From NCBI GenBank assembly GCA_965644315.1, contig CBFFRQ010000129.1:1-8129 (forward strand): DNA of 8,129 nt, in the 5' to 3' direction. Positions 2 to 8,129 of the stretch are shown here, piece after piece. The DNA is from Caecitellus pseudoparvulus (lineage: Eukaryota > Protista > Bigyra: Bicosoecida). A program made the translations under genes and the position numbers. Every line of letters begins with the position of its first letter. Positions within the stretch are counted from its first letter, which is position 1. The notes beneath the pieces are model-generated. The model saw only the letters and a list, made by a program, of their open reading frames with translations. It made no database searches and was not told where the DNA came from.

Positions 2-3000
2 AAGGCTGTAGCAACTGATCCTGGCCTGCGGGGCCAGCTTCCACTGGACACCATGCTGTTTGTGCTGGGGCAGTTTGCATCACTCTCTGCAGACGTCCCT
101 GACGGCTACTTGGAGGAATTCCGTTGCATGATGTCTTCAGCCTTCCTGGCTTGCTTCCAGTGGATCCTCCCTGGCTGTGAGGGCAGCTTTGGCTCAGATG
201 CAGCGAAGCAGACAGTCATCCGTGCAATCTTGTTCATGGAATCGGGCACCCCCTTGACCTTGCCGGGAAGGGAGGCACCAGTAAGCTTATTGCGGCTGCT
301 AAACAAAGATGCACCGAGTGCGCTGCCATGTTTGGCAAGGGTGCAGCTGCTGAGCCAGTTGCACACTCACCCTGGTTTCAGTGAGCAGCTTGCACAAGTC
401 TCGTTCGAGACAAGCAGTGCCACGTTCATGCCGACTGCCCTTGGTATTGCTCTGTCACGCCAGGTTGCAGCGCTGTACGGGTGGGAGGTTGCGCATCTCA
501 AGACCCATGCTTCTTACGACTTGCTCGTGTGGATGCTTGCGAAGCACACTTCTGAGCACGTCCTTCGCATCGGACCCACAAACACATGCCCGCTGGAGCC
601 GGCGGCTGCTGAAGTACTGTCCTCCAGACATGCGGATGCGCGGTCACCCCTAGACAAGGCCAGGTTTGCTGCACAGAGCTTGGTGTTCTGCGAACTGCTT
701 GCTGCAATGCTCGGATCGAATCCAGATCACGAAAGTATTCGTGCACGGCCTGTGAAGGAAGCAATGAAGCGGCTCCAAGGGGCCAGTCCTGCATGGGGTG
801 CAGTGGTCATGGCGCACATCGCAGGCTCAGAGAGGGGATACGACCGCCTAACCAGAGTTCTGGCACATGAAAGCGTTCTGAAGGAGTTGGGTCTGGAGGC
901 CTGGCACTTGGCTTCTTTTGCTGAAAGCTCAGAGGAAGCAAAGGCTGCGTGCACAAAGTTCATTTCAGTTTCTTTGTCTTCTGATGAATTTGTTGAAGAG
1001 CTTAGCGCCCTTCTGAAGGCGTGCAACTCTGAAGCATCGGCTCTGCGTCCCGCCCTCGGTCGCTGTGCCGCTGGCTTGAAGAGCCACCGCTGCGCCCACT
1101 GGCTGACAAGCCCGACCACACAGTTTGTCCTCGGACTAGAAGCTGCTGCCGGCGACGCGAGGCTGAAAGCGAAAGAGGGAATGGAGCTGTCTGGGTCTCT
1201 CCTCGCAGGCGCGGTGCTCCACGAGCTTGTAGATGGCAAGTACGGCAACTCCTTGCACTTCGCCACCCACATCCCCGTCATGCTGTCGTTCTACCAGTGG
1301 TGCAATGAGGAGCTCGCAGGCAAGTTCACACGGGACGAGTGGAACATGCCAATGAAAGCTGTGTTGTCCAGCAAGAGGCTCGATCAAGTGGCAGTCGATG
1401 TGGGCAGAAAGAAGCTTGACGAGTTTGTGAGAAGTTGGAACTTGCTTCAAGCAGCATTTGGCATGTACGAAGCTGTGTGTGGCCACCAAGCTGAGCTCGA
1501 GCAGGGCATTCCCAGGCTTTCCATCGACAAAGAGGACGGCTTCAAGCAGCTCCTGCTGGGTGAGGCAATCAGTTTTCCGTTTGACGAGAGCGACAATGAG
1601 GGAGCTTTACCGTTGCGCATGCTCACAGAGCGTCTTGTCACGTCTCAGAACGCGATGATGGAGTTGGATGCAACAAGACAGCTGAGAGCGATGACAGCCT
1701 TGTCTGGCATCAATCGAGGAGGATGCTTGCTGGAAGCAACACACGGCGAGCGCTCCCTGATGCATGTTGCCAGCACGGCAGTCTCGTTCCGTGAACTTGT
1801 CATGCACACCGGGGAGGTCGATCCCTACGTTGATCAGGAAGAAGGCGAAGGCGCCCCTCTCTCACTCGTGGAGAAGCTTCGCCGACTCATTCCCTGCTTC
1901 TTGCGCTGGGAGGTGGATGTAGAGTACGACGATGTAGAGCCTGAACACGATTCTTCGTCTCTTGACCTTGACGAGCTCATTCGGCAACAGGCATTGGAAG
2001 CTGCACACAGGGCAGGACGAAGCACGCAACAGCTCATGCATGAACAAAAGTACAGCATCTGCCCGAACCCAGACTGCCAGCGCCTCATGGAGAGGACGAT
2101 GTACTGTGACGATGGCGTCTGTGGCCAGCACTCACATGAGAATGCCGCTGAGACTGCGAATCGGCTGAAAGACGAGAAGCAGAGCGGGAAGAAGCGTGGA
2201 TGTGGGGCAACGTTCAGCTACGAAGCTCAACGAGTACCGAAACCAAGGGCTGATGAGCCGCCACTGGATGTATTCCTGCCGGAGAAGTACAAGCTACGCT
2301 TGGACAGCGATGAGGCACGATCCAGTTGGGCCGCAGCTCAGGCAGGTGCTTCTGAAGGCTGCAAGGCATTTGCTTCTGGGCGCGTGGGCGTCGACTTTGA
2401 GAACTTGGCCCGCTTCTTACTCCCGCTGATCATGGGGGGGAAGATGCGCTTGGGCGTGTCTGACCTGCACGTCACGTTCAAATTGAAAGAAGAGGGTGGG
2501 CAAGCAGCGACCAGCAGCGTCAAGCCAGTTCTTGATGTTCCCGCGGGAACGGAGTCCAAGGAGGAGTCATGGTCTGAACAAGAGGAAGATCATGCAGAGA
2601 AAGAGCCCGAAGTTCCGGAAGTGTCTGAGGAGCAGTCCCTGCTTGAAGAAGCCCTGCTGCTCTGCGAGGAAGCTGGTGTTGAGTGGAAGGACAGCAAACT
2701 TACTGCTCTGTCGCTCACAGACAAGCAGTGGCGCGAACTCGTGCGCACTGCCACAGATTCCGTGAGGAAGCTGCTTGAGGAAGGCATTCTTGTTGCCAGC
2801 TTGAGAAGGAAGTTGTTCAATGGAGGCCCAGCACAAACATCACACAAACTCAGGCGACTGGCAGTGGGGAGCTACAAGTCCTTGGTGCGACACTTTCAGA
2901 AGCACCTAGCAAAGGCAAAATCTCACTGCGCTCTTCCAGATGCAATCATGGAAGTAGTAAACGAGCGCATGCGCTCCATTGAAGATATGTCAGCCGATGG

Positions 3001-4876
3001 AGATGCGAAGGTTGCTCTGAGTGACCTCAGCATGCTTAAACACCTGAGGGACGCACTCGCAGAAGCATCCGTCTCGTGGCTGTCCCAAAGCTCCTCAGAG
3101 TCGCTGCTGGCCGATAACCAATTTGTTCACGCAGCACTGTACGGAGAAAAGAAGCCAAAGATCTCCATGGCACACATTTTGCTGGGCATCACTCAGGCTG
3201 ACGGATCAGCCTCCGACGGAGTGCTTGTAGGCGCATTTGTTCCTGTCACCAACGCCATCCAGCAACTTTCTCAACGCCTTCGCACGATCTTGCAGGGCGT
3301 GGAAGATTTGAAGCGGAGTGACAGTTCTGGGGTGAACCCGCGCTGCAGATATGCTCCGAAACTCCTCTTTGCGTCAGACGCAAGCACACCAGACTTCTTG
3401 GACAGCGCACCCATCGGTCACGCCTTGGCAGCGGATGAGGCTCTGAAATTGGACGCACACAAGCAAATGCGGGAGCAAGAAAGGGAAGCTGCGCGCTTGG
3501 AGCCAACTGGAGGCCAAGCAATGCCCCAAGCGCAGTCACGCGGAGGGCAGGCCATGCCTCAACCAATGCGCACTGGGGGGCGAGGAAGCTCACATTTTCT
3601 CGGTGGACACCCACAGGCTGGGACAGCGGCCAAGAAAGAACAGCCGTTGCGTCGAATTGGTCAGTCTCCCGGTGAAATGCCGCTTGAGTGTGAGCAAGAT
3701 GTGATCGATGCTGTGGCGCAACTGAAGGCCTCTGCCTTGGCCTGTGGCACGCTGGACGACGAAAGCATGCACCTCGCTTCGCGTGTCCGGGAGGCTTTGG
3801 ATGGTGACCTGCGTGATGTATTATCAGACTTCAAGGTGATCGAGTTCACAAACGGCGTAGACGACCTTGTTGAGCAGCACGCGCCAAGCAGTGCTGGCCA
3901 GGAAAGCAAAGGCATCACACTCTCCCTGACTTTGCTTGGTGCGAGTGACCCAAGCTCGGACTCCTGCTTCTTGCGCAGTTCACAAAGAAGCAGAAGGATC
4001 AGGCTGGCAGATAGCATGCTGGAGTCCATCCCAGAGTTCCAAGCTGCGGCACTGAAGGGACTCAAGCAGCGCAGCCCTCCGAGTGAGCACTGCTTCATGC
4101 TCAAATGGGCTGGCATCACGACTCCAGTGGCCCTGAACGAAGCCAACTTTGCTGCATTCCAGACAGCTCTGCGCTCACCCAGCGAGAGTCGCTTCGGTGT
4201 GGGGGTGGTGAGCACGGATGCATGCATGCAAGCAGTTCCCCTATTGCTGCTCGGCCTGCCTGGCGACGGCCCAAGCGGGCGGGTGCTGGAGGCGCAAACA
4301 GAGATCAAGCTCGACATCCGCGTGCCGGTGGACGTGGGGACAATTTTCGACTTGGTGCACGTTCCAGCATCCTCTCGAGACAAGTTTATCGTGGAATTTT
4401 GCACCTCTGCCGGAACCAAGGCGCCTGGCAGCGACCTGTCCGGCGTGGTGCTGCAAAGCATCCACGTCCACCCAAGGCAGGCCTGCCATGTAGCCCTGTA
4501 CGTCGTAAGTGATATGGAGCAGGACATTCGGGCTTTGGAAACCTTGGGAACCCAACATGTTGGTGGCCGTGAGGTGTTGGCCGGCCCCATCGCGGTCCAG
4601 CTTGATCCAACTCAGACTTTTGCGGAGCAAGTGGCGGCCTGCTACGCGGCGGTGGGGCTTCCCGCTCCAGAAGACGACTCCATCATGGTGCTGCACGACG
4701 CTGACTGGATGGATGAAGAGTGGGATCCTGAAAAAGTGGAGTTGGGAAAGCACGTTGCAGTGGAGGTCGAGGAAGTACCGCACGCAATGCCACTCCCCGA
4801 CCCGCTGTGTGTGTGGGGAGGCAAAACGGTTGCGCTTGCGCGACCGACCATCGCGCTTCCAAGACACCAAGGGTGA
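2..4876 (+). CDS. Large RNF213/mysterin-like E3 ubiquitin ligase, C-terminal part (5'-partial; frame is open from the window edge, first in-window ATG at 53)
   Basis: Uninterrupted ORF of 1607 aa from ATG 53, and codons 2-52 (KAVATDPGLRGQLPLDT) are also stop-free. Ordered motifs LHFATHIPVMLSFYQW...FVRSWNLL...FP-x6-GALPLRMLTERLVTSQN...VASTAVSFRELV...LRRLIPCFLRWEV...VDFENLARFLLPLIMGGKMRL (nt ~1253-2452) parallel the RNF213 C-terminal series recalled as FLPEILALQ...FLSTWNKL...LP-x4-GLCATALVSYLIRLHN...VDAAEVTELHVI...LTPLILSNCQYQV...FDLEKIQRQIVSRFLQGKPRL. The CDS itself is near certain; the family call is a by-eye inference. Confidence 0.75.
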   Translation, partial: KAVATDPGLRGQLPLDTMLFVLGQFASLSADVPDGYLEEFRCMMSSAFLACFQWILPGCEGSFGSDAAKQTVIRAILFMESGTPLTLPGREAPVSLLRLLNKDAPSALPCLARVQLLSQLHTHPGFSEQLAQVSFETSSATFMPTALGIALSRQVAALYGWEVAHLKTHASYDLLVWMLAKHTSEHVLRIGPTNTCPLEPAAAEVLSSRHADARSPLDKARFAAQSLVFCELLAAMLGSNPDHESIRARPVKEAMKRLQGASPAWGAVVMAHIAGSERGYDRLTRVLAHESVLKELGLEAWHLASFAESSEEAKAACTKFISVSLSSDEFVEELSALLKACNSEASALRPALGRCAAGLKSHRCAHWLTSPTTQFVLGLEAAAGDARLKAKEGMELSGSLLAGAVLHELVDGKYGNSLHFATHIPVMLSFYQWCNEELAGKFTRDEWNMPMKAVLSSKRLDQVAVDVGRKKLDEFVRSWNLLQAAFGMYEAVCGHQAELEQGIPRLSIDKEDGFKQLLLGEAISFPFDESDNEGALPLRMLTERLVTSQNAMMELDATRQLRAMTALSGINRGGCLLEATHGERSLMHVASTAVSFRELVMHTGEVDPYVDQEEGEGAPLSLVEKLRRLIPCFLRWEVDVEYDDVEPEHDSSSLDLDELIRQQALEAAHRAGRSTQQLMHEQKYSICPNPDCQRLMERTMYCDDGVCGQHSHENAAETANRLKDEKQSGKKRGCGATFSYEAQRVPKPRADEPPLDVFLPEKYKLRLDSDEARSSWAAAQAGASEGCKAFASGRVGVDFENLARFLLPLIMGGKMRLGVSDLHVTFKLKEEGGQAATSSVKPVLDVPAGTESKEESWSEQEEDHAEKEPEVPEVSEEQSLLEEALLLCEEAGVEWKDSKLTALSLTDKQWRELVRTATDSVRKLLEEGILVASLRRKLFNGGPAQTSHKLRRLAVGSYKSLVRHFQKHLAKAKSHCALPDAIMEVVNERMRSIEDMSADGDAKVALSDLSMLKHLRDALAEASVSWLSQSSSESLLADNQFVHAALYGEKKPKISMAHILLGITQADGSASDGVLVGAFVPVTNAIQQLSQRLRTILQGVEDLKRSDSSGVNPRCRYAPKLLFASDASTPDFLDSAPIGHALAADEALKLDAHKQMREQEREAARLEPTGGQAMPQAQSRGGQAMPQPMRTGGRGSSHFLGGHPQAGTAAKKEQPLRRIGQSPGEMPLECEQDVIDAVAQLKASALACGTLDDESMHLASRVREALDGDLRDVLSDFKVIEFTNGVDDLVEQHAPSSAGQESKGITLSLTLLGASDPSSDSCFLRSSQRSRRIRLADSMLESIPEFQAAALKGLKQRSPPSEHCFMLKWAGITTPVALNEANFAAFQTALRSPSESRFGVGVVSTDACMQAVPLLLLGLPGDGPSGRVLEAQTEIKLDIRVPVDVGTIFDLVHVPASSRDKFIVEFCTSAGTKAPGSDLSGVVLQSIHVHPRQACHVALYVVSDMEQDIRALETLGTQHVGGREVLAGPIAVQLDPTQTFAEQVAACYAAVGLPAPEDDSIMVLHDADWMDEEWDPEKVELGKHVAVEVEEVPHAMPLPDPLCVWGGKTVALARPTIALPRHQG
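2060..2221 (+). other. Cys/His-rich Rcat(RING2)/IBR-like module within the large CDS
   Basis: CPNPDCQRLMERTMYCDDGVCGQHSH-x24-GCGATFSY follows the RBR Rcat pattern CPxC..IEK..GC.HM.C...(G)CG..FCW. The last Cys pair is absent, as in some variant Rcat domains. Confidence 0.55.
3509..3562 (+). repeat. Two in-frame copies of peptide GGQAMPQ (33-nt period) in a low-complexity linker
   Basis: gga ggc caa gca atg ccc caa (3509-3529) versus gga ggg cag gcc atg cct caa (3542-3562). Confidence 0.9.
3914..4213 (+). other. Possible PB1-like beta-grasp domain
   Basis: Order of elements ITLSLTLL / RSRRIRL / SIPEFQAAALKGL / FMLKW / PVAL / NEANFAAFQTAL / FGVGVV fits PB1 topology. The acidic OPCA (DxEGD) motif is absent. 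Confidence 0.35.
4484..4768 (+). other. Possible SUMO-like/ubiquitin-like domain near the C-terminus
   Basis: IAVQLDPTQTFAEQVAACYAAVGLP..SIMVLHDADWMDEEWDPEKVELGKHVAVEV aligns in register with SUMO1 (recalled) [55 protein letters not shown]; the last 30 residues need no gap. Confidence 0.45.
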
Positions 4877-4924
4877 CTTCATCTGCGAGCTTCCCATCTC
4901 TATTCAATACAATCTCTGTCATCT

Positions 4925-4938
4925 TTAGGTTAGGTTAG
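4925..4938 (+). repeat. Short variant telomere-like repeat TTAGG TTAGG TTAG
   Basis: Directly visible, ~50 nt downstream of the stop codon. Confidence 0.6.
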
Positions 4939-5180
4939 TCAGATGTAATGCATTTCACTTCCACACTTGTTCATGTGCGGTTCAGCTGGAGCTTCACAAT
5001 AGATGTTACAAACCGCTAGGCGGTCACTCACATCAGCATGGCTACCATTTTCATGGCTCTGCAACAAACACAGACTTTCGTCCGTTCTATATGTCGCCAT
5101 GTGCTAGGATACTTCAGTATCCGCTCCGGGTGGGAACGTCTTGTGAGTCCTGGATGGAGAACTTGTTTTGGTGGGGGGAC

Positions 5181-5646
5181 TATAAATCCATAATGAATTT
5201 ATGAGCGATATGTCTCAACTGCTGCCGCAGTTTGCGACTAAAAACAGATATATTTTTATACTATATCTATAATACTATTCTTAGATATATTTATATTATA
5301 TCTATAACACTTATTAGACCCTATCCCTATAAAACCAATCTCTTATAAACCCTTTACTATATTTTTTACTTACTTTTTACTACTATTTTATAAGTGTTAT
5401 CTTAAGGGTTATCACTACAATAAATAGAAATAATATAAAAAATATAATAAATATATATATATATATTTTTTCTGAGACTATTCTTAACACTTCATCAACA
5501 ATCAGTCAAAACAAAATTGAAGCAATCAACCATCCATCCAAACACCCTATTTTAGAAACAATCAAAGGAGGCGAAATGACAAAATAAAAAGATACATTCT
5601 AAATCACTTATTCATATATCATTTAACACTAAATCCATTATAACCC
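5181..5646. other. AT-rich subtelomeric island, non-coding
   Basis: Abrupt composition drop relative to both flanks (e.g. only 7 G/C in 5241-5300). No ORF in the track. Contains (AT)8 at 5451-5466. Confidence 0.85.
5246..5315. repeat. Imperfect ~35-bp tandem duplication, each unit a hairpin (AGATATA...TATATCT)
   Basis: agatatatttttatactatatctataatactatt (5246-5279) versus agatatatttatattatatctataacacttatt (5283-5315). Confidence 0.75.
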
Positions 5647-5670
5647 TTAGGGGGTTAGGGTTAGGGTTAG
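5647..5670 (+). repeat. Short internal telomeric tract TTAGGGGG TTAGGG TTAGGG TTAG, preceded by one inverted unit TAACCC (5641-5646)
   Basis: Directly visible; same orientation as the terminal array. Confidence 0.95.
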
Positions 5671-5745
5671 CTACTCAATGCATTGCAGATTGCCTCCATG
5701 CAGGCTACATCATGGTACAGCTTGGGCTTGGACATGTGGTGCCAC

Positions 5746-6289
5746 CTGCGCCACAACAGAATGCAGTGACACAGACACCACGACGGCACCGCTTGCACGG
5801 CTTTGCGACTAGCACAGACTCGTGTCCGTTGTATAAGTCGCCGTCTGTCTTGGCGCTTCAGCGCCCGCCCCGGTGGGATGGTCTTGAGGTGTAGGTCCAG
5901 GTCTCGGTCCACTCTTGTCTTGTCCGTCCAGTCCAGTCTCGTCCGTCTCGGTCCGATGTCCAGGGGTGGAGACCCGACTTGCTTGGCTTGGGTGGCGGTG
6001 TGGGCTGGAGGATATGGACTCGACACGGACTGGGTGTTGCTGAGATGCAAGCACACGACCCAGCCCGGCTGTCCCTTCGGCTCAGGTTTGGGGGCGGCCT
6101 CACAGATCTTGCTGCAAGTGCCTTCCCCTTCCACTGAGCCGAGTCCTGATGTGTTGGTATCGATGTTGGGTTGGTGATGGTGAGGTTGGGTTGGACTTTC
6201 CAATGTCCGATGTCAGCTATGTGCGTCGGTCGCGACACAAAGCTTCAGTCATGTGTGGCACAGGGAGTATGCCCCCACAGGTGACTTAC
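5746..6289 (-). other. Putative 544-nt spliceosomal GT-AG intron (phase 2)
   Basis: Consensus donor GTAAGT at 6289-6284, GCAG acceptor ending at 5746, low-complexity interior. Confidence 0.55.
5893..5961. repeat. Low-complexity GTCC/GTCTC degenerate repeat
   Basis: aggtccaggtctcggtccactcttgtcttgtccgtccagtccagtctcgtccgtctcggtccgatgtcc; GTCCGATGTC occurs at 5951-5960 and again at 6205-6214. Confidence 0.7.
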
Positions 6290-6590
6290 ATCAGGCGTCC
6301 ACCCATCTGCCCGATCGAGATGTGGGGCACATCCTTGACCTTGGGCAGGCGACCCTCGCCGTCTTCAGGCACCAGCCGCTTGAGGGGGTCCTTGACCTCA
6401 GCCTCCAGGGTGGCGGCCTGCTGTCGGGTCATCCGCCCATGAGGCATGGCCACCCTTGTGCCCTTGCCAGCGATGAGGGTCTGGGGGTGCATCGCGTGCT
6501 CAGGCAGGGGGAAGTCATCTCGGAGAGACTGGAGTGCCCCTCGAAGCCTGTCCCGGAAGGGTGCTGGACTGCCCGCCTCGGGTGTGGTCC

Positions 6591-8116
6591 GGTTAGGGTT
6601 AGGGTTAGGGTTAGGGTTAGGGTTAGGGTTAGGGTTAGGGGTTAGGGGTTAGGGTTAGGGTTAGGGTTAGGGTTAGGGTTAGGGTTAGGGTTAGGGTTAG
6701 GGTTAGGGTTAGGGTTAGGGTTAGGGTTAGGGTTAGGGTTAGGGTTAGGGTTAGGGTTAGGGTTAGGGTTAGGGTTAGGGTTAGGGTTAGGGTTAGGGTT
6801 AGGGTTAGGGTTAGGGTTAGGGTTAGGGTTAGGGTTAGGGTTAGGGTTAGGGTTAGGGTTAGGGTTAGGGTTAGGGTTAGGGTTAGGGTTAGGGTTAGGG
6901 TTAGGGTTAGGGTTAGGGTTAGGGTTAGGGTTAGGGTTAGGGTTAGGGTTAGGGTTAGGGTTAGGGTTAGGGTTAGGGTTAGGGTTAGGGTTAGGGTTAG
7001 GGTTAGGGTTAGGGTTAGGGTTAGGGTTAGGGTTAGGGTTAGGGTTAGGGTTAGGGTTAGGGTTAGGGTTAGGGTTAGGGTTAGGGTTAGGGTTAGGGTT
7101 AGGGTTAGGGTTAGGGTTAGGGTTAGGGTTAGGGTTAGGGTTAGGGTTAGGGTTAGGGTTAGGGTTAGGGTTAGGGTTAGGGTTAGGGTTAGGGTTAGGG
7201 TTAGGGTTAGGGTTAGGGTTAGGGTTAGGGTTAGGGTTAGGGTTAGGGTTAGGGTTAGGGTTAGGGTTAGGGTTAGGGTTAGGGTTAGGGTTAGGGTTAG
7301 GGTTAGGGTTAGGGTTAGGGTTAGGGTTAGGGTTAGGGTTAGGGTTAGGGTTAGGGTTAGGGTTAGGGTTAGGGTTAGGGTTAGGGTTAGGGTTAGGGTT
7401 AGGGTTAGGGTTAGGGTTAGGGTTAGGGTTAGGGTTAGGGTTAGGGTTAGGGTTAGGGTTAGGGTTAGGGTTAGGGTTAGGGTTAGGGTTAGGGTTAGGG
7501 TTAGGGTTAGGGTTAGGGTTAGGGTTAGGGTTAGGGTTAGGGTTAGGGTTAGGGTTAGGGTTAGGGTTAGGGTTAGGGTTAGGGTTAGGGTTAGGGTTAG
7601 GGTTAGGGTTAGGGTTAGGGTTAGGGTTAGGGTTAGGGTTAGGGTTAGGGTTAGGGTTAGGGTTAGGGTTAGGGTTAGGGTTAGGGTTAGGGTTAGGGTT
7701 AGGGTTAGGGTTAGGGTTAGGGTTAGGGTTAGGGTTAGGGTTAGGGTTAGGGTTAGGGTTAGGGTTAGGGTTAGGGTTAGGGTTAGGGTTAGGGTTAGGG
7801 TTAGGGTTAGGGTTAGGGTTAGGGTTAGGGTTAGGGTTAGGGTTAGGGTTAGGGTTAGGGTTAGGGTTAGGGTTAGGGTTAGGGTTAGGGTTAGGGTTAG
7901 GGTTAGGGTTAGGGTTAGGGTTAGGGTTAGGGTTAGGGTTAGGGTTAGGGTTAGGGTTAGGGTTAGGGTTAGGGTTAGGGTTAGGGTTAGGGTTAGGGTT
8001 AGGGTTAGGGTTAGGGTTAGGGTTAGGGTTAGGGTTAGGGTTAGGGTTAGGGTTAGGGTTAGGGTTAGGGTTAGGGTTAGGGTTAGGGTTAGGGTTAGGG
8101 TTAGGGTTAGGGTTAG
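6591..8116 (+). repeat. Terminal telomere (TTAGGG)n, 1526 bp (~254 units)
   Basis: Near-perfect array with the G-rich strand running 5'->3' toward the end. Two TTAGGGG variants at 6635-6648. Confidence 0.99.
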
Positions 8117-8129
8117 AGCAATACATAAA
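8117..8129 (+). other. Probable untrimmed Oxford Nanopore ligation adapter remnant (technical)
   Basis: AGCAATACATAAA matches 11/13 to AGCAATACGTAAC, the reverse complement of the adapter end ...GTTACGTATTGCT. Confidence 0.85.

What the first reader, a model, noticed from the sequence alone, without database searches (positions are those of the whole stretch)
1916..2389. RBR Rcat-like Cys module inserted into the RNF213-like core, with no RZ finger visible: possible swapped catalytic module
Seen: the blocks LRRLIPCFLRWEV (ends 1915) and VDFENLARFLLPLIMGGKMRL (starts 2390) are separated by ~158 aa containing CPNPDC-x9-CDDGVCGQHSH...GCGATF. As I recall them, the equivalent blocks in RNF213 are only a short loop apart. 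No RZ-finger motif (CxNGH..Y.IGECG..M...CxxC..IGG..H) occurs in the ~415 aa upstream of the first block, where RNF213 would be expected to carry it. Established: both the RNF213 RZ finger and the RBR Rcat work through a catalytic Cys thioester. Inference: this lineage may have replaced RZ with an orphan Rcat (no RING1 or IBR in the window), with the Cys of MYCDD as candidate nucleophile. I do not recognise such an E3 architecture as described.
Basis: partly seen in the sequence, partly recalled or inferred. Interest (0 to 1): 0.8.

Follow-up and report, generated by a model that had tools for sequence, protein, structure and literature searches.

The report
One-zinc Rcat-like module in RNF213-like giant
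A marine protist's giant RNF213-like ATPase lacks both zinc fingers that RNF213 carries (RING and RZ) and instead has, on flexible linkers, a cut-down copy of the catalytic domain of RBR ubiquitin ligases, which is probably its ubiquitin-accepting site but has not been tested.

Summary
Window nt 2-4876 encode the last 1624 aa of a giant protein; a full paralog has 6300 aa. Its AAA core matches RNF213 (phmmer E 1e-20). Residues 378-826 match human RNF213 4752-4979 structurally (VIA Z 9.9).

About 158 aa (nt 1916-2389) are inserted where RNF213 has a short hairpin turn. Pfam finds no RING and no RZ, although it finds both in a real RNF213 control.

The insert holds a helix plus a one-zinc module:
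- Its profile matches the genome's own RBR Rcat domains (hhalign 92%, E 6e-7), not their IBRs (4.5%).
- Distant homologs have the Rcat spacing C-x2-C-x9-C-x4-C.
- In an exhaustive fold search, 11 of the 15 chains with Z of 2 or more are RBR ligases, but Z is at most 4.

It is only half an Rcat, because the second zinc site is gone. C702, at the catalytic position, is kept in all 8 distant homologs and 3 of 5 paralogs; two paralogs have Ser. The module lies about 400 residues downstream of the RZ position, and related protist proteins have neither module, so "swap" is not shown.

Catalysis is inferred, not demonstrated. I rate this a new variant of a known kind, interest about 0.7.

The parts
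2..4876 (+). C-terminal 1624 codons plus stop of an RNF213-like AAA+ giant gene. It is cut at the contig start; the full-length paralog on C57 is one 6300-codon ORF.
1133..2479 (+). aa 378-826: domain that matches the last subdomain of the RNF213 E3 module (human 4752-4979, which holds R4810). It is interrupted by the insert.
   Evidence: VIA Z 9.9, 223 aligned, rmsd 4.3; hhalign aa 413-505 on RNF213 ~4772-4866, 69%, E 4e-5
1877..1915 (+). Flanking block 1 (LRRLIPCFLRWEV), the first strand of the hairpin that carries the insert.
1916..2389 (+). The ~158-aa insert relative to RNF213: low-confidence linker, helix, one-zinc module, conserved Pro-rich tail, low-confidence linker.
1958..2044 (+). 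aa 653-681: helix leading into the zinc module, with invariant R673 and Q676. It aligns with the linker helix before the Rcat of HOIL-1 (427-443) and before the IBR of Parkin (313-327).
2060..2203 (+). aa 687-734: zinc core. C687, C692, C707 and C734 are invariant in 12 of 12 sequences and are the inferred four zinc ligands. It includes a lineage-specific helix at aa 715-728.
2105..2107 (+). Codon of C702 (TGT), at the position of the Rcat catalytic Cys. The codon is TCT (Ser) in the C197 and C184 paralogs.
2231..2287 (+). aa 744-762: conserved tail R-V-P-x-P ... P-P-L-x-x-F-L-P (R744 invariant). Function unknown.
2390..2452 (+). Flanking block 2 (VDFENLARFLLPLIMGGKMRL), the return strand plus helix. 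It aligns to the RNF213 FDLEKIQ...GKPRL stretch.

Best explanation
The window encodes the C-terminal third of a giant RNF213-like AAA+ protein that has neither the RING nor the RZ finger of RNF213.

A mobile cassette is spliced into a beta-hairpin of the last E3-module subdomain, about 40 residues before the point where the RNF213 CTD would begin. The cassette has ~25-30-residue flexible linkers on each side. It consists of a conserved helix followed by a minimal Rcat-derived domain.

That domain is the first zinc lobe of an RBR RING2. One zinc is held by C687, C692, C707 and C734. A fifth, non-ligand Cys (C702) sits five residues before the third ligand, exactly where Rcat domains carry their catalytic cysteine.

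Most likely mechanism (inferred): an E2~ubiquitin docks on the large scaffold without a RING, as in RNF213. The tethered module swings in and C702 takes ubiquitin as a thioester. Ubiquitin is then passed to a substrate. The AAA core probably gates this step as it does in RNF213.

Shown here: the RNF213-type scaffold, the insertion, the absence of RING and RZ, Rcat-type sequence and fold, conservation, purifying selection, and presence in RNA libraries. Inferred: the zinc ligand set, thioester chemistry, E2 docking and the substrate.

My confidence that the module is Rcat/IBR-derived is about 0.8. My confidence that it is the active transthiolation site is about 0.5.
For: Scaffold: RNF213 PDB chains hit at E 1e-20; VIA Z 9.9 to RNF213 4752-4979; hhalign 69%, E 4e-5.

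Rcat ancestry:
- The module profile against six Rcats of this same genome gives hhalign 92%, E 6e-7, with the family Cys on the catalytic Cys; against the genome's IBRs it gives 4.5%.
- PF22191, which in this genome scores 40-58 bits on the C-terminal Rcat and 23 bits on the IBR, hits P0005 at 1.2e-4, P0008 at 2.8e-4 and P0004 at 3.6e-3.
- The best PDB sequence hits are the HOIL-1 RING2 and Ariadne-1 RING2.
- Distant homologs read CPxC-x9-GC[DE]xxxCG, and P0005 and P0008 keep the His at +2.

Fold: in an exhaustive VIA search only 15 of 48,161 chains reach Z 2 or more, and 11 of them are RBR ligases. Examples are Parkin IBR (Z 4.0, rmsd 1.9, 38 aligned) and HOIL-1 RING2 (Z 3.4, rmsd 2.8, 50 aligned).

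Conservation: four Cys are invariant in 12 of 12 sequences and C702 in 10 of 12. Omega is 0.14-0.23 in the zinc core against ~0.33 gene-wide.

No other Cys/His cluster exists in the C-terminal half of the full-length proteins.

Precedent: RNF213 docks its E2 through the CTD, its RING is dispensable, and its RZ is a flexibly tethered one-zinc domain with a free nucleophilic Cys (PMC12075652, PMC11549300).

RNA-library contigs cover the module.
Against: - Only half of an Rcat is present. All known active Rcats bind two zinc ions.
- No Pfam hit reaches the gathering score (best 22.3 against 27 bits).
- Structural Z scores are low (at most 4.0), and the top match is an IBR, which is non-catalytic.
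- In the window's own lineage the Gly before the Cys and the His at +2 are lost (YCDD).
- Two paralogs under purifying selection carry Ser at 702.
- The ~800-aa tail shows no sequence similarity to the E2-docking CTD of RNF213, so E2 recruitment is unexplained.
- The zinc ligand assignment could not be checked on coordinates.
- The complex prediction of the module with ubiquitin gave no verdict.
Confidence: 0.5

Rival explanations
1. The module is a non-catalytic IBR-like zinc ribbon. It would be a ubiquitin-, E2~Ub- or partner-binding or purely structural element. C702 would be conserved for structural reasons, possibly as a zinc ligand with C687, C692 and C707, leaving C734 for another role.
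For: The best structural match is the Parkin IBR 328-369 (Z 3.5-4.0). The window copy has the IBR-type CPxPxC knuckle. Pfam IBR gives a weak hit (E 0.057). The second zinc site and the His base are missing. Ser replaces C702 in two selected paralogs. No RING1 or recognisable E2-docking CTD is present.
Against: The profile comparison favours Rcat over IBR (92% against 4.5%), though the IBR profile had only 2 sequences. Distant homologs have the Rcat CPxC knuckle and the E[RK]xxGC[DE]H-type motif. The four invariant Cys are the ones homologous to Rcat/IBR zinc site 1, while the variable one is the catalytic-position Cys. That is the pattern expected if C702 is not a ligand.
Confidence: 0.3
2. 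The module is a generic small zinc ribbon unrelated to ubiquitin transfer (for example binding nucleic acid, lipid or glycan), and its resemblance to RBR domains is convergent.
For: All individual database hits are below curated thresholds. Z is at most 4 for a ~50-residue domain. Other protist RNF213-like proteins carry assorted unrelated Cys clusters.
Against: Independent methods converge on RBR domains only: hmmsearch against PDB, Pfam, hhalign, Foldseek, exhaustive VIA and Atlas. The exact x2/x9/x4 spacing and the shared GC..xC and C-x3-[FL] motifs are hard to get by chance.
Confidence: 0.1
3. The module is a strongly diverged RZ finger, the same domain as in RNF213 and ZNFX1.
For: Both are one-zinc domains with a free Cys between the ligand pairs, both are tethered by flexible linkers, and both sit on the same scaffold (PMC11549300).
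Against: The Pfam RZ model finds nothing here but scores 75-81 bits on real RZ fingers. Ligand order differs (C-x3-H ... C-x2-C against C-x2-C ... C ... C). The insertion point is ~400 residues downstream of the RZ position; in P0020 and RNF213 the RZ lies ~270-300 residues before the conserved domain that here precedes the module. hhalign links the module to Rcat.
Confidence: 0.03

Closest known systems
RNF213 (mysterin), vertebrate giant AAA+ E3 ligase
   Same: The dynein-like AAA core is shared (E 1e-20). The last E3-module subdomain is shared (Z 9.9 to residues 4752-4979; hhalign E 4e-5). Both have a small one-zinc domain with a free Cys on flexible tethers. RING-independent logic is plausible for both.
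   Different: This protein has no RING and no RZ finger. The Cys module belongs to a different family (Rcat-type) and sits at a different insertion point (equivalent to human ~4945, against RZ at 4483-4555). The tail after the module is ~800 aa and shows no sequence similarity to the 220-aa E2-docking CTD. The full protein has 6300 aa and there are five paralogs.
RBR E3 ligase Rcat (RING2) domains, closest HOIL-1/RBCK1 and Ariadne-1
   Same: The spacing C-x2-C-x9-C*-x4-C, the E[KR]xxGC motif, an acidic residue after the Cys as in HOIL-1 (GCD), a preceding helix, and the fold of zinc lobe 1 are shared.
   Different: The second zinc site is missing. An insert of 13-26 residues separates the third and fourth ligands. 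No RING1 or IBR is present in the protein. The His base is absent in the window lineage.
IBR domain (for example Parkin 328-377)
   Same: It is the best structural superposition (Z 4.0, rmsd 1.9 over 38 residues). The window has the CPxPxC knuckle and a GCG-x2-F motif like Parkin's.
   Different: An IBR has no Cys at the catalytic position and has two zinc sites. The profile comparison with this genome's IBRs is poor (4.5%).
RZ finger of RNF213 and ZNFX1
   Same: Functional analogy only: a one-zinc mini-domain with a free nucleophilic Cys, flexibly tethered, that takes ubiquitin from an E2 held elsewhere.
   Different: The sequence motif, ligand order and fold family are unrelated, and the Pfam RZ model is negative.

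Membership tests
RNF213-like AAA+ E3 family | Dynein-like AAA core with sequence similarity to RNF213 | tested here: met
   phmmer of the C57 paralog against PDB gives RNF213 chains at E 1e-20 in three stretches. The reverse search finds RNF213 orthologs. The window itself is cut before the core.
RNF213-like AAA+ E3 family | E3-module fold | tested here: met
   Only the last subdomain was modelled: VIA Z 9.9, 223 aligned, to 9jwg_A 4752-4979; hhalign 69%, E 4e-5.
RNF213-like AAA+ E3 family | RING domain in the E3 module | tested here: not met
   No Pfam RING and no Cys cluster was found in the 6300-aa paralog, P0001 or P0007. The control RNF213 scores 2.8e-7.
RNF213-like AAA+ E3 family | RZ finger (PF20173) with nucleophilic Cys | tested here: not met
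   Pfam is negative at E up to 1. Motif search is negative. The controls score 2.7e-21 and 4.7e-23.
RNF213-like AAA+ E3 family | C-terminal E2-docking CTD | tested here: inconclusive
   hhalign of aa 800-1624 against the RNF213 CTD finds nothing.
RBR Rcat (RING2) domain | C-x2-C-x9-C*-x4-C spacing with Gly before the catalytic Cys | tested here: met
   Met in all 8 distant homologs. The window lineage has x4 in the first knuckle and Tyr instead of Gly.
RBR Rcat (RING2) domain | Significant profile similarity to Rcat domains | tested here: inconclusive
   hhalign against six native Rcats gives 92%, E 6e-7 over 30 columns. The Pfam PF22191 best score is 22.3 bits, below the 27-bit cut-off. PDB hmmsearch gives E 0.25.
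RBR Rcat (RING2) domain | Second zinc site (C-x2-C ... C/H ... C/H) | tested here: not met
   No conserved Cys or His follows C734. The Phe-Cys of Rcat is Phe-Ser here, and only P0008 keeps a Cys there.
RBR Rcat (RING2) domain | Conserved catalytic Cys | tested here: met
   Cys in 10 of 12 aligned sequences, including all distant homologs. Ser in the paralogs on C197 and C184.
RBR Rcat (RING2) domain | His two residues after the catalytic Cys (general base) | tested here: not met
   The window has C-D-D. His is present only in P0005 and P0008.
RBR Rcat (RING2) domain | Preceded by RING1 and IBR in the same protein | tested here: not met
   No such domains were found by Pfam or Cys-cluster scan in the full-length proteins.
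RBR Rcat (RING2) domain | Forms a ubiquitin thioester | not testable with these tools
   This needs biochemistry. The complex prediction with ubiquitin gave no verdict.
IBR domain | Two zinc sites (C6HC) and no catalytic-position Cys | tested here: not met
   The module has one site only and a conserved fifth Cys. The fold of lobe 1 matches the Parkin IBR (Z 4.0), but the profile against native IBRs gives 4.5%.

The most novel reading that the evidence does not exclude
The RNF213-type AAA+ scaffold is a platform onto which evolution has mounted different tethered transthiolation cassettes: RZ in animals and some protists, and here a minimal single-zinc Rcat. This module would be the first Rcat shown to work with one zinc ion and without RING1 or IBR. 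That would define the smallest functional RBR catalytic unit and a new E3 architecture. Paralogs carrying Ser at the nucleophile position would be natural dominant-negative or oxyester-forming variants in a multi-copy, partly subtelomeric, possibly immune gene family.
Probability: 0.35. Interest if true: 0.85.

Novelty: new variant of a known kind. Interest (0 to 1): 0.7.

Why it matters
Cysteine-relay E3 ligases are few: HECT, RBR, RCR and RZ. How their catalytic modules arise and move between scaffolds is poorly known.

This family would show that an Rcat can be detached from RING1-IBR, pared down to a single zinc lobe, and grafted onto the RNF213 scaffold. RNF213 is known to dock E2 enzymes without a RING. 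That gives a natural experiment on the minimal requirements for transthiolation.

It also bears on whether the E3 function of RNF213 predates the RZ finger. Related amoebozoan, heterolobosean and ciliate proteins carry neither module.

The host domain is the one that holds the Moyamoya R4810 site. The Cys-to-Ser paralogs offer ready-made controls.

No paper in the searched library describes such an architecture. That library is incomplete.

Tried and rejected
- phmmer of the window protein against PDB found nothing.
- Word-indexed homolog searches around the module were blank or returned only the query. Homologs came only from the exhaustive HMMER search (7 hits).
- The search for related loci on metagenome contigs failed: the alignment was too diverse and a single-protein query found no relatives.
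- Complex prediction of module + Zn + this genome's ubiquitin gave no verdict (median ipSAE 0.31, mark 0.34, controls 0.00). It counts neither for nor against binding.
- hhalign of the 800-aa tail against the RNF213 CTD gave no match. The ESM Atlas feature search of the tail gave no usable hit.
- Whole-length hhalign of family against RNF213 is unreliable outside aa ~413-505.
- The diverged-RZ reading was rejected on motif order, a negative Pfam RZ result and a different insertion site.
- The intron or misassembly reading was rejected. The insert is in frame, conserved and selected, and no joints appear in RNA-library contigs.
- The RZ/module anticorrelation is 0 of 61 proteins with both. It rests on two clades, so it is not statistical evidence.
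- The terminal TTAGGG tract (from ~nt 6590) was kept out of all searches.
Full report
**What is in the window.**
Frame 2 is open from nt 2 to a stop at 4874-4876, giving 1624 codons. The window is the start of contig C129, so the gene is cut at its 5' end.

The genome (30.6 Mb, 215 contigs) holds four more copies at 84-87% nucleotide identity. The copy on C57 is a single uninterrupted ORF of 6300 codons. Earlier notes of this scan call the organism a marine protist.

Block 1 is aa 626-638 (nt 1877-1915) and block 2 starts at aa 797 (nt 2390). Between them lie C687 and C692 (CPNPDC), C702 (MYCDD), C707, H710, H712 and C734 (GCGATF).

**Is it RNF213-like?**
Yes.
- Pfam finds several AAA domains in the full paralog.
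- phmmer of its C-terminal 3333 aa against PDB sequences returns only RNF213 chains at significant E-values (about 1e-20, three collinear stretches in the AAA core).
- The reverse search with the AAA core recovers RNF213 orthologs. It also recovers a series of giant protist proteins from Mallomonas, Physarum, Pelomyxa, Naegleria, dictyostelids, Tetrahymena and Stentor.
- The window part alone has no sequence hit in PDB. However, an AF2 model of aa 378-860 (mean pLDDT 67.9) aligns to the human RNF213 E3 module, chain 9jwg_A residues 4752-4979. The scores are Z 9.9, rmsd 4.3 Å and 223 aligned residues, and the next unrelated hits have Z of 3.
- Profile-profile alignment independently puts aa 413-505 on RNF213 ~4772-4866 (probability 69%, E 4e-5).

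This is the last subdomain of the E3 module, the one that contains the Moyamoya R4810 site (mouse R4753; PMC7311170). It lies C-terminal of the RZ finger, whose zinc ligands are C4505, H4509, C4525 and C4528, with nucleophile C4516 (PMC11549300).

**Is there an insertion?**
Yes.
- The 449 model residues cover only 228 RNF213 residues.
- When the insert is deleted from the family alignment, both flanking blocks align to one contiguous RNF213 stretch in which their equivalents are about ten residues apart. That alignment has low probability (6.8%) but is collinear with the anchored part.
- In the model the two blocks are the two strands of a hairpin (E257-263 and E415-420).
- The stretches next to them have pLDDT below 50, which suggests flexible tethers.

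**Are RZ and RING absent?**
Yes.
- Pfam finds neither in the window, the whole C57 paralog, P0001 (6047 aa) or P0007 (5680 aa, Mallomonas).
- The same library scores the RZ finger at 2.7e-21 and the RING at 2.8e-7 in a primate RNF213, and the RZ at 4.7e-23 in a protist-type homolog.
- A scan for Cys/His clusters finds only one cluster in the C-terminal 1600 aa of these proteins, and that is the module itself.
- In RNF213 and in P0020 the RZ lies ~270-300 residues before the conserved domain that here spans aa 413-505. The corresponding window stretch has no Cys cluster.

**What is the module?**
The exhaustive HMMER search found only seven related proteins. All that cover the region carry the module.

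*Conservation.* Twelve sequences were aligned. C687, P688, C692, C707, G708, C734 and R744 are invariant. C702 is Cys in ten and Ser in two.

*Motif.* The distant homologs read CPxC-x9-GC[DE]xxxCG ... GCG ... RVP. This is the Rcat spacing C-x2-C-x9-C*-x4-C with the E[KR]xxGC signature. Two of them (P0005, P0008) keep the His at +2, and P0008 keeps a Cys where the second zinc site of Rcat begins.

*Sequence evidence pointing to Rcat:*
- A profile of the module against PDB sequences gives HOIL-1 RING2 (E 0.25) and Ariadne-1 RING2 among its few hits. The family Cys falls on the catalytic position.
- Pfam PF22191 hits P0005 at 1.2e-4, P0008 at 2.8e-4 and P0004 at 3.6e-3, all below the gathering score. 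In this genome's own RBR ligases PF22191 scores 40-58 bits on the C-terminal Rcat and only ~23 bits on the IBR.
- hhalign of the module profile against the six Rcat domains of this genome gives 92% probability, E 6e-7, over 30 columns. Against the two native IBRs that could be extracted it gives 4.5%. The IBR profile is thinner, so this contrast is indicative only.

*Structural evidence.* The module-only model has pLDDT 71.8, with 76-90 over the core.
- Foldseek returns almost only Parkin, RNF216 and HOIL-1 among its top hits, at weak E-values.
- An exhaustive VIA search of 48,161 representative chains finds just 15 with Z of 2 or more, of which 11 are RBR ligases. These include Parkin IBR 330-369 (Z 4.0, rmsd 1.9 Å, 38 aligned), HOIL-1 RING2 427-477 (Z 3.4, rmsd 2.8 Å, 50 aligned) and the RNF216 Rcat.
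- The ESM Atlas shape search also puts a Parkin cluster first.

IBR and Rcat share one fold, so structure alone does not separate them. The sequence profile and the fifth Cys do.

**What it is not.**
- It is not a complete Rcat. Nothing conserved follows C734 that could form the second zinc site.
- In the window's own lineage the first knuckle has x4 spacing (CPNPDC). The Gly before the Cys is Tyr, and the His at +2 is Asp.
- The invariant four Cys are those homologous to zinc site 1 of Rcat/IBR. The only variable Cys is the catalytic-position one. This is the pattern expected if C702 is a free, functional residue rather than a ligand. It is an inference, because I could not read model coordinates.

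**Paralogs.**
- The copies on C197 and C184 share a single TGT-to-TCT change that turns C702 into Ser.
- All copies are under purifying selection (omega about 0.33). It is strongest in the zinc core (0.14-0.23).
- The C184 copy is an intact 4689-codon ORF. The C197 copy has a frame break near its 3' end. Both diverge from the C57 type upstream of residue 1849.
- The Ser copies could be inactive, regulatory or oxyester-forming variants. They weaken, but do not refute, a catalytic role for C702.

**Expression.**
- Contigs from two RNA-seq runs of one organism cover nt 2066-2279, the zinc core, at about 96% identity. These may be one data set filed twice.
- Contigs from metatranscriptome libraries, which may contain DNA, cross both insert borders with 0-1 differences and no joints.
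- The insert is therefore not spliced out. Transcription is likely but not proven.

**Mechanism.**
RNF213 does not need its RING. The E2 docks on the CTD, and the flexibly tethered one-zinc RZ domain supplies the nucleophile (PMC12075652, PMC11549300). ZNFX1 uses an RBR-like relay from a Miz-bound E2 to its RZ (bioRxiv 10.1101/2025.10.14.682297).

On that precedent an "orphan" Rcat-type cassette tethered to the same scaffold is a coherent design. The insertion point corresponds to about 40 residues before the end of the RNF213 E3 module, followed in RNF213 by the loop that leads to the CTD (PMC7311170).

The weak points are these:
- The 800-aa tail here shows no sequence similarity to the RNF213 CTD.
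- I could not model the tail.
- A complex prediction of the module with the genome's own ubiquitin gave no verdict.

I therefore put about 0.8 on Rcat/IBR-type ancestry and about 0.5 on an active transthiolation site with C702 as nucleophile.

**Swap or gain?**
Among 61 RNF213-like proteins of 3000 aa or more collected here:
- 3 have the module only,
- 39 have RZ only,
- 19 have neither,
- none has both.

The counts come from few clades. The amoebozoan, Naegleria and ciliate relatives have neither module, and the conserved upstream domain in Physarum, Pelomyxa and P0015 is not followed by any Cys cluster. The module also sits at a different site than RZ. The data fit an independent gain in one lineage, whose only named member is the stramenopile Mallomonas, at least as well as a replacement.

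**Verdict.**
I found no description of this architecture in the searched literature. I class it as a new variant of a known kind, because known scaffold and known catalytic fold are combined and pared down in a new way. Interest is about 0.7.

Noticed in passing
window 4877-8129: The gene ends ~1.7 kb from a chromosome end. After it come a unique AT-rich spacer (~4880-5640) and a short internal telomere-type repeat (~5640-5670). A ~930-bp element (5652-6580) follows; it occurs in at least 40 copies at 98% identity, nearly all a few kb from contig ends. The TTAGGG tract then runs from ~6590 to the window end. This fits the telomere-associated retrotransposon arrays noted earlier in this genome.
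   Followed up: partly
window 1916-2389 versus flanks, five paralogs: Synonymous divergence between paralogs is 2-3 times higher inside the insert (dS 0.3-0.8) than in the flanking parts of the gene (0.1-0.3), while omega stays low. This suggests mosaic histories, for example gene conversion homogenising the flanks but not the module.
   Followed up: no
G000 C184:17767-41984 and C197:28847-52668 (loci L012, L019-L022): The two Ser-702 paralogs diverge from the C57-type gene upstream of residue ~1849. They are preceded by other long ORFs of ~500 and ~2630 codons that do not match the C57 N-terminus. The C197 copy has a frame break ~130 codons before the normal stop.
   Followed up: partly
P0016, P0018, P0020, P0023, P0067: Other protist RNF213-like giants carry different small Cys clusters near the C-terminus. 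Tetrahymena has a C-x2-C ... C-x2-C cluster and Stentor an RZ-like ...IGG..H remnant. Dictyostelids have C-x2-C pairs, and one ENA protein combines a U-box with an RZ finger. The scaffold may host varied zinc modules.
   Followed up: no
P0002 (NCBI CAE7878979.1, labelled Symbiodinium sp. KB8, 135 aa): This fragment is 75% identical to window aa 300-390. It is probably from a relative of this protist present in that assembly rather than from a dinoflagellate gene. P0004 is filed as 'archaeon' but is clearly a eukaryotic member of this family.
   Followed up: no
G000 C92:108890-109009, C30:55085-55198, C31:703974-704087 (L025, L026, L028): Several canonical Rcat domains of this genome lie in very long open frames (2639-4327 codons). 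The organism therefore also has giant RBR-type ligases.
   Followed up: no
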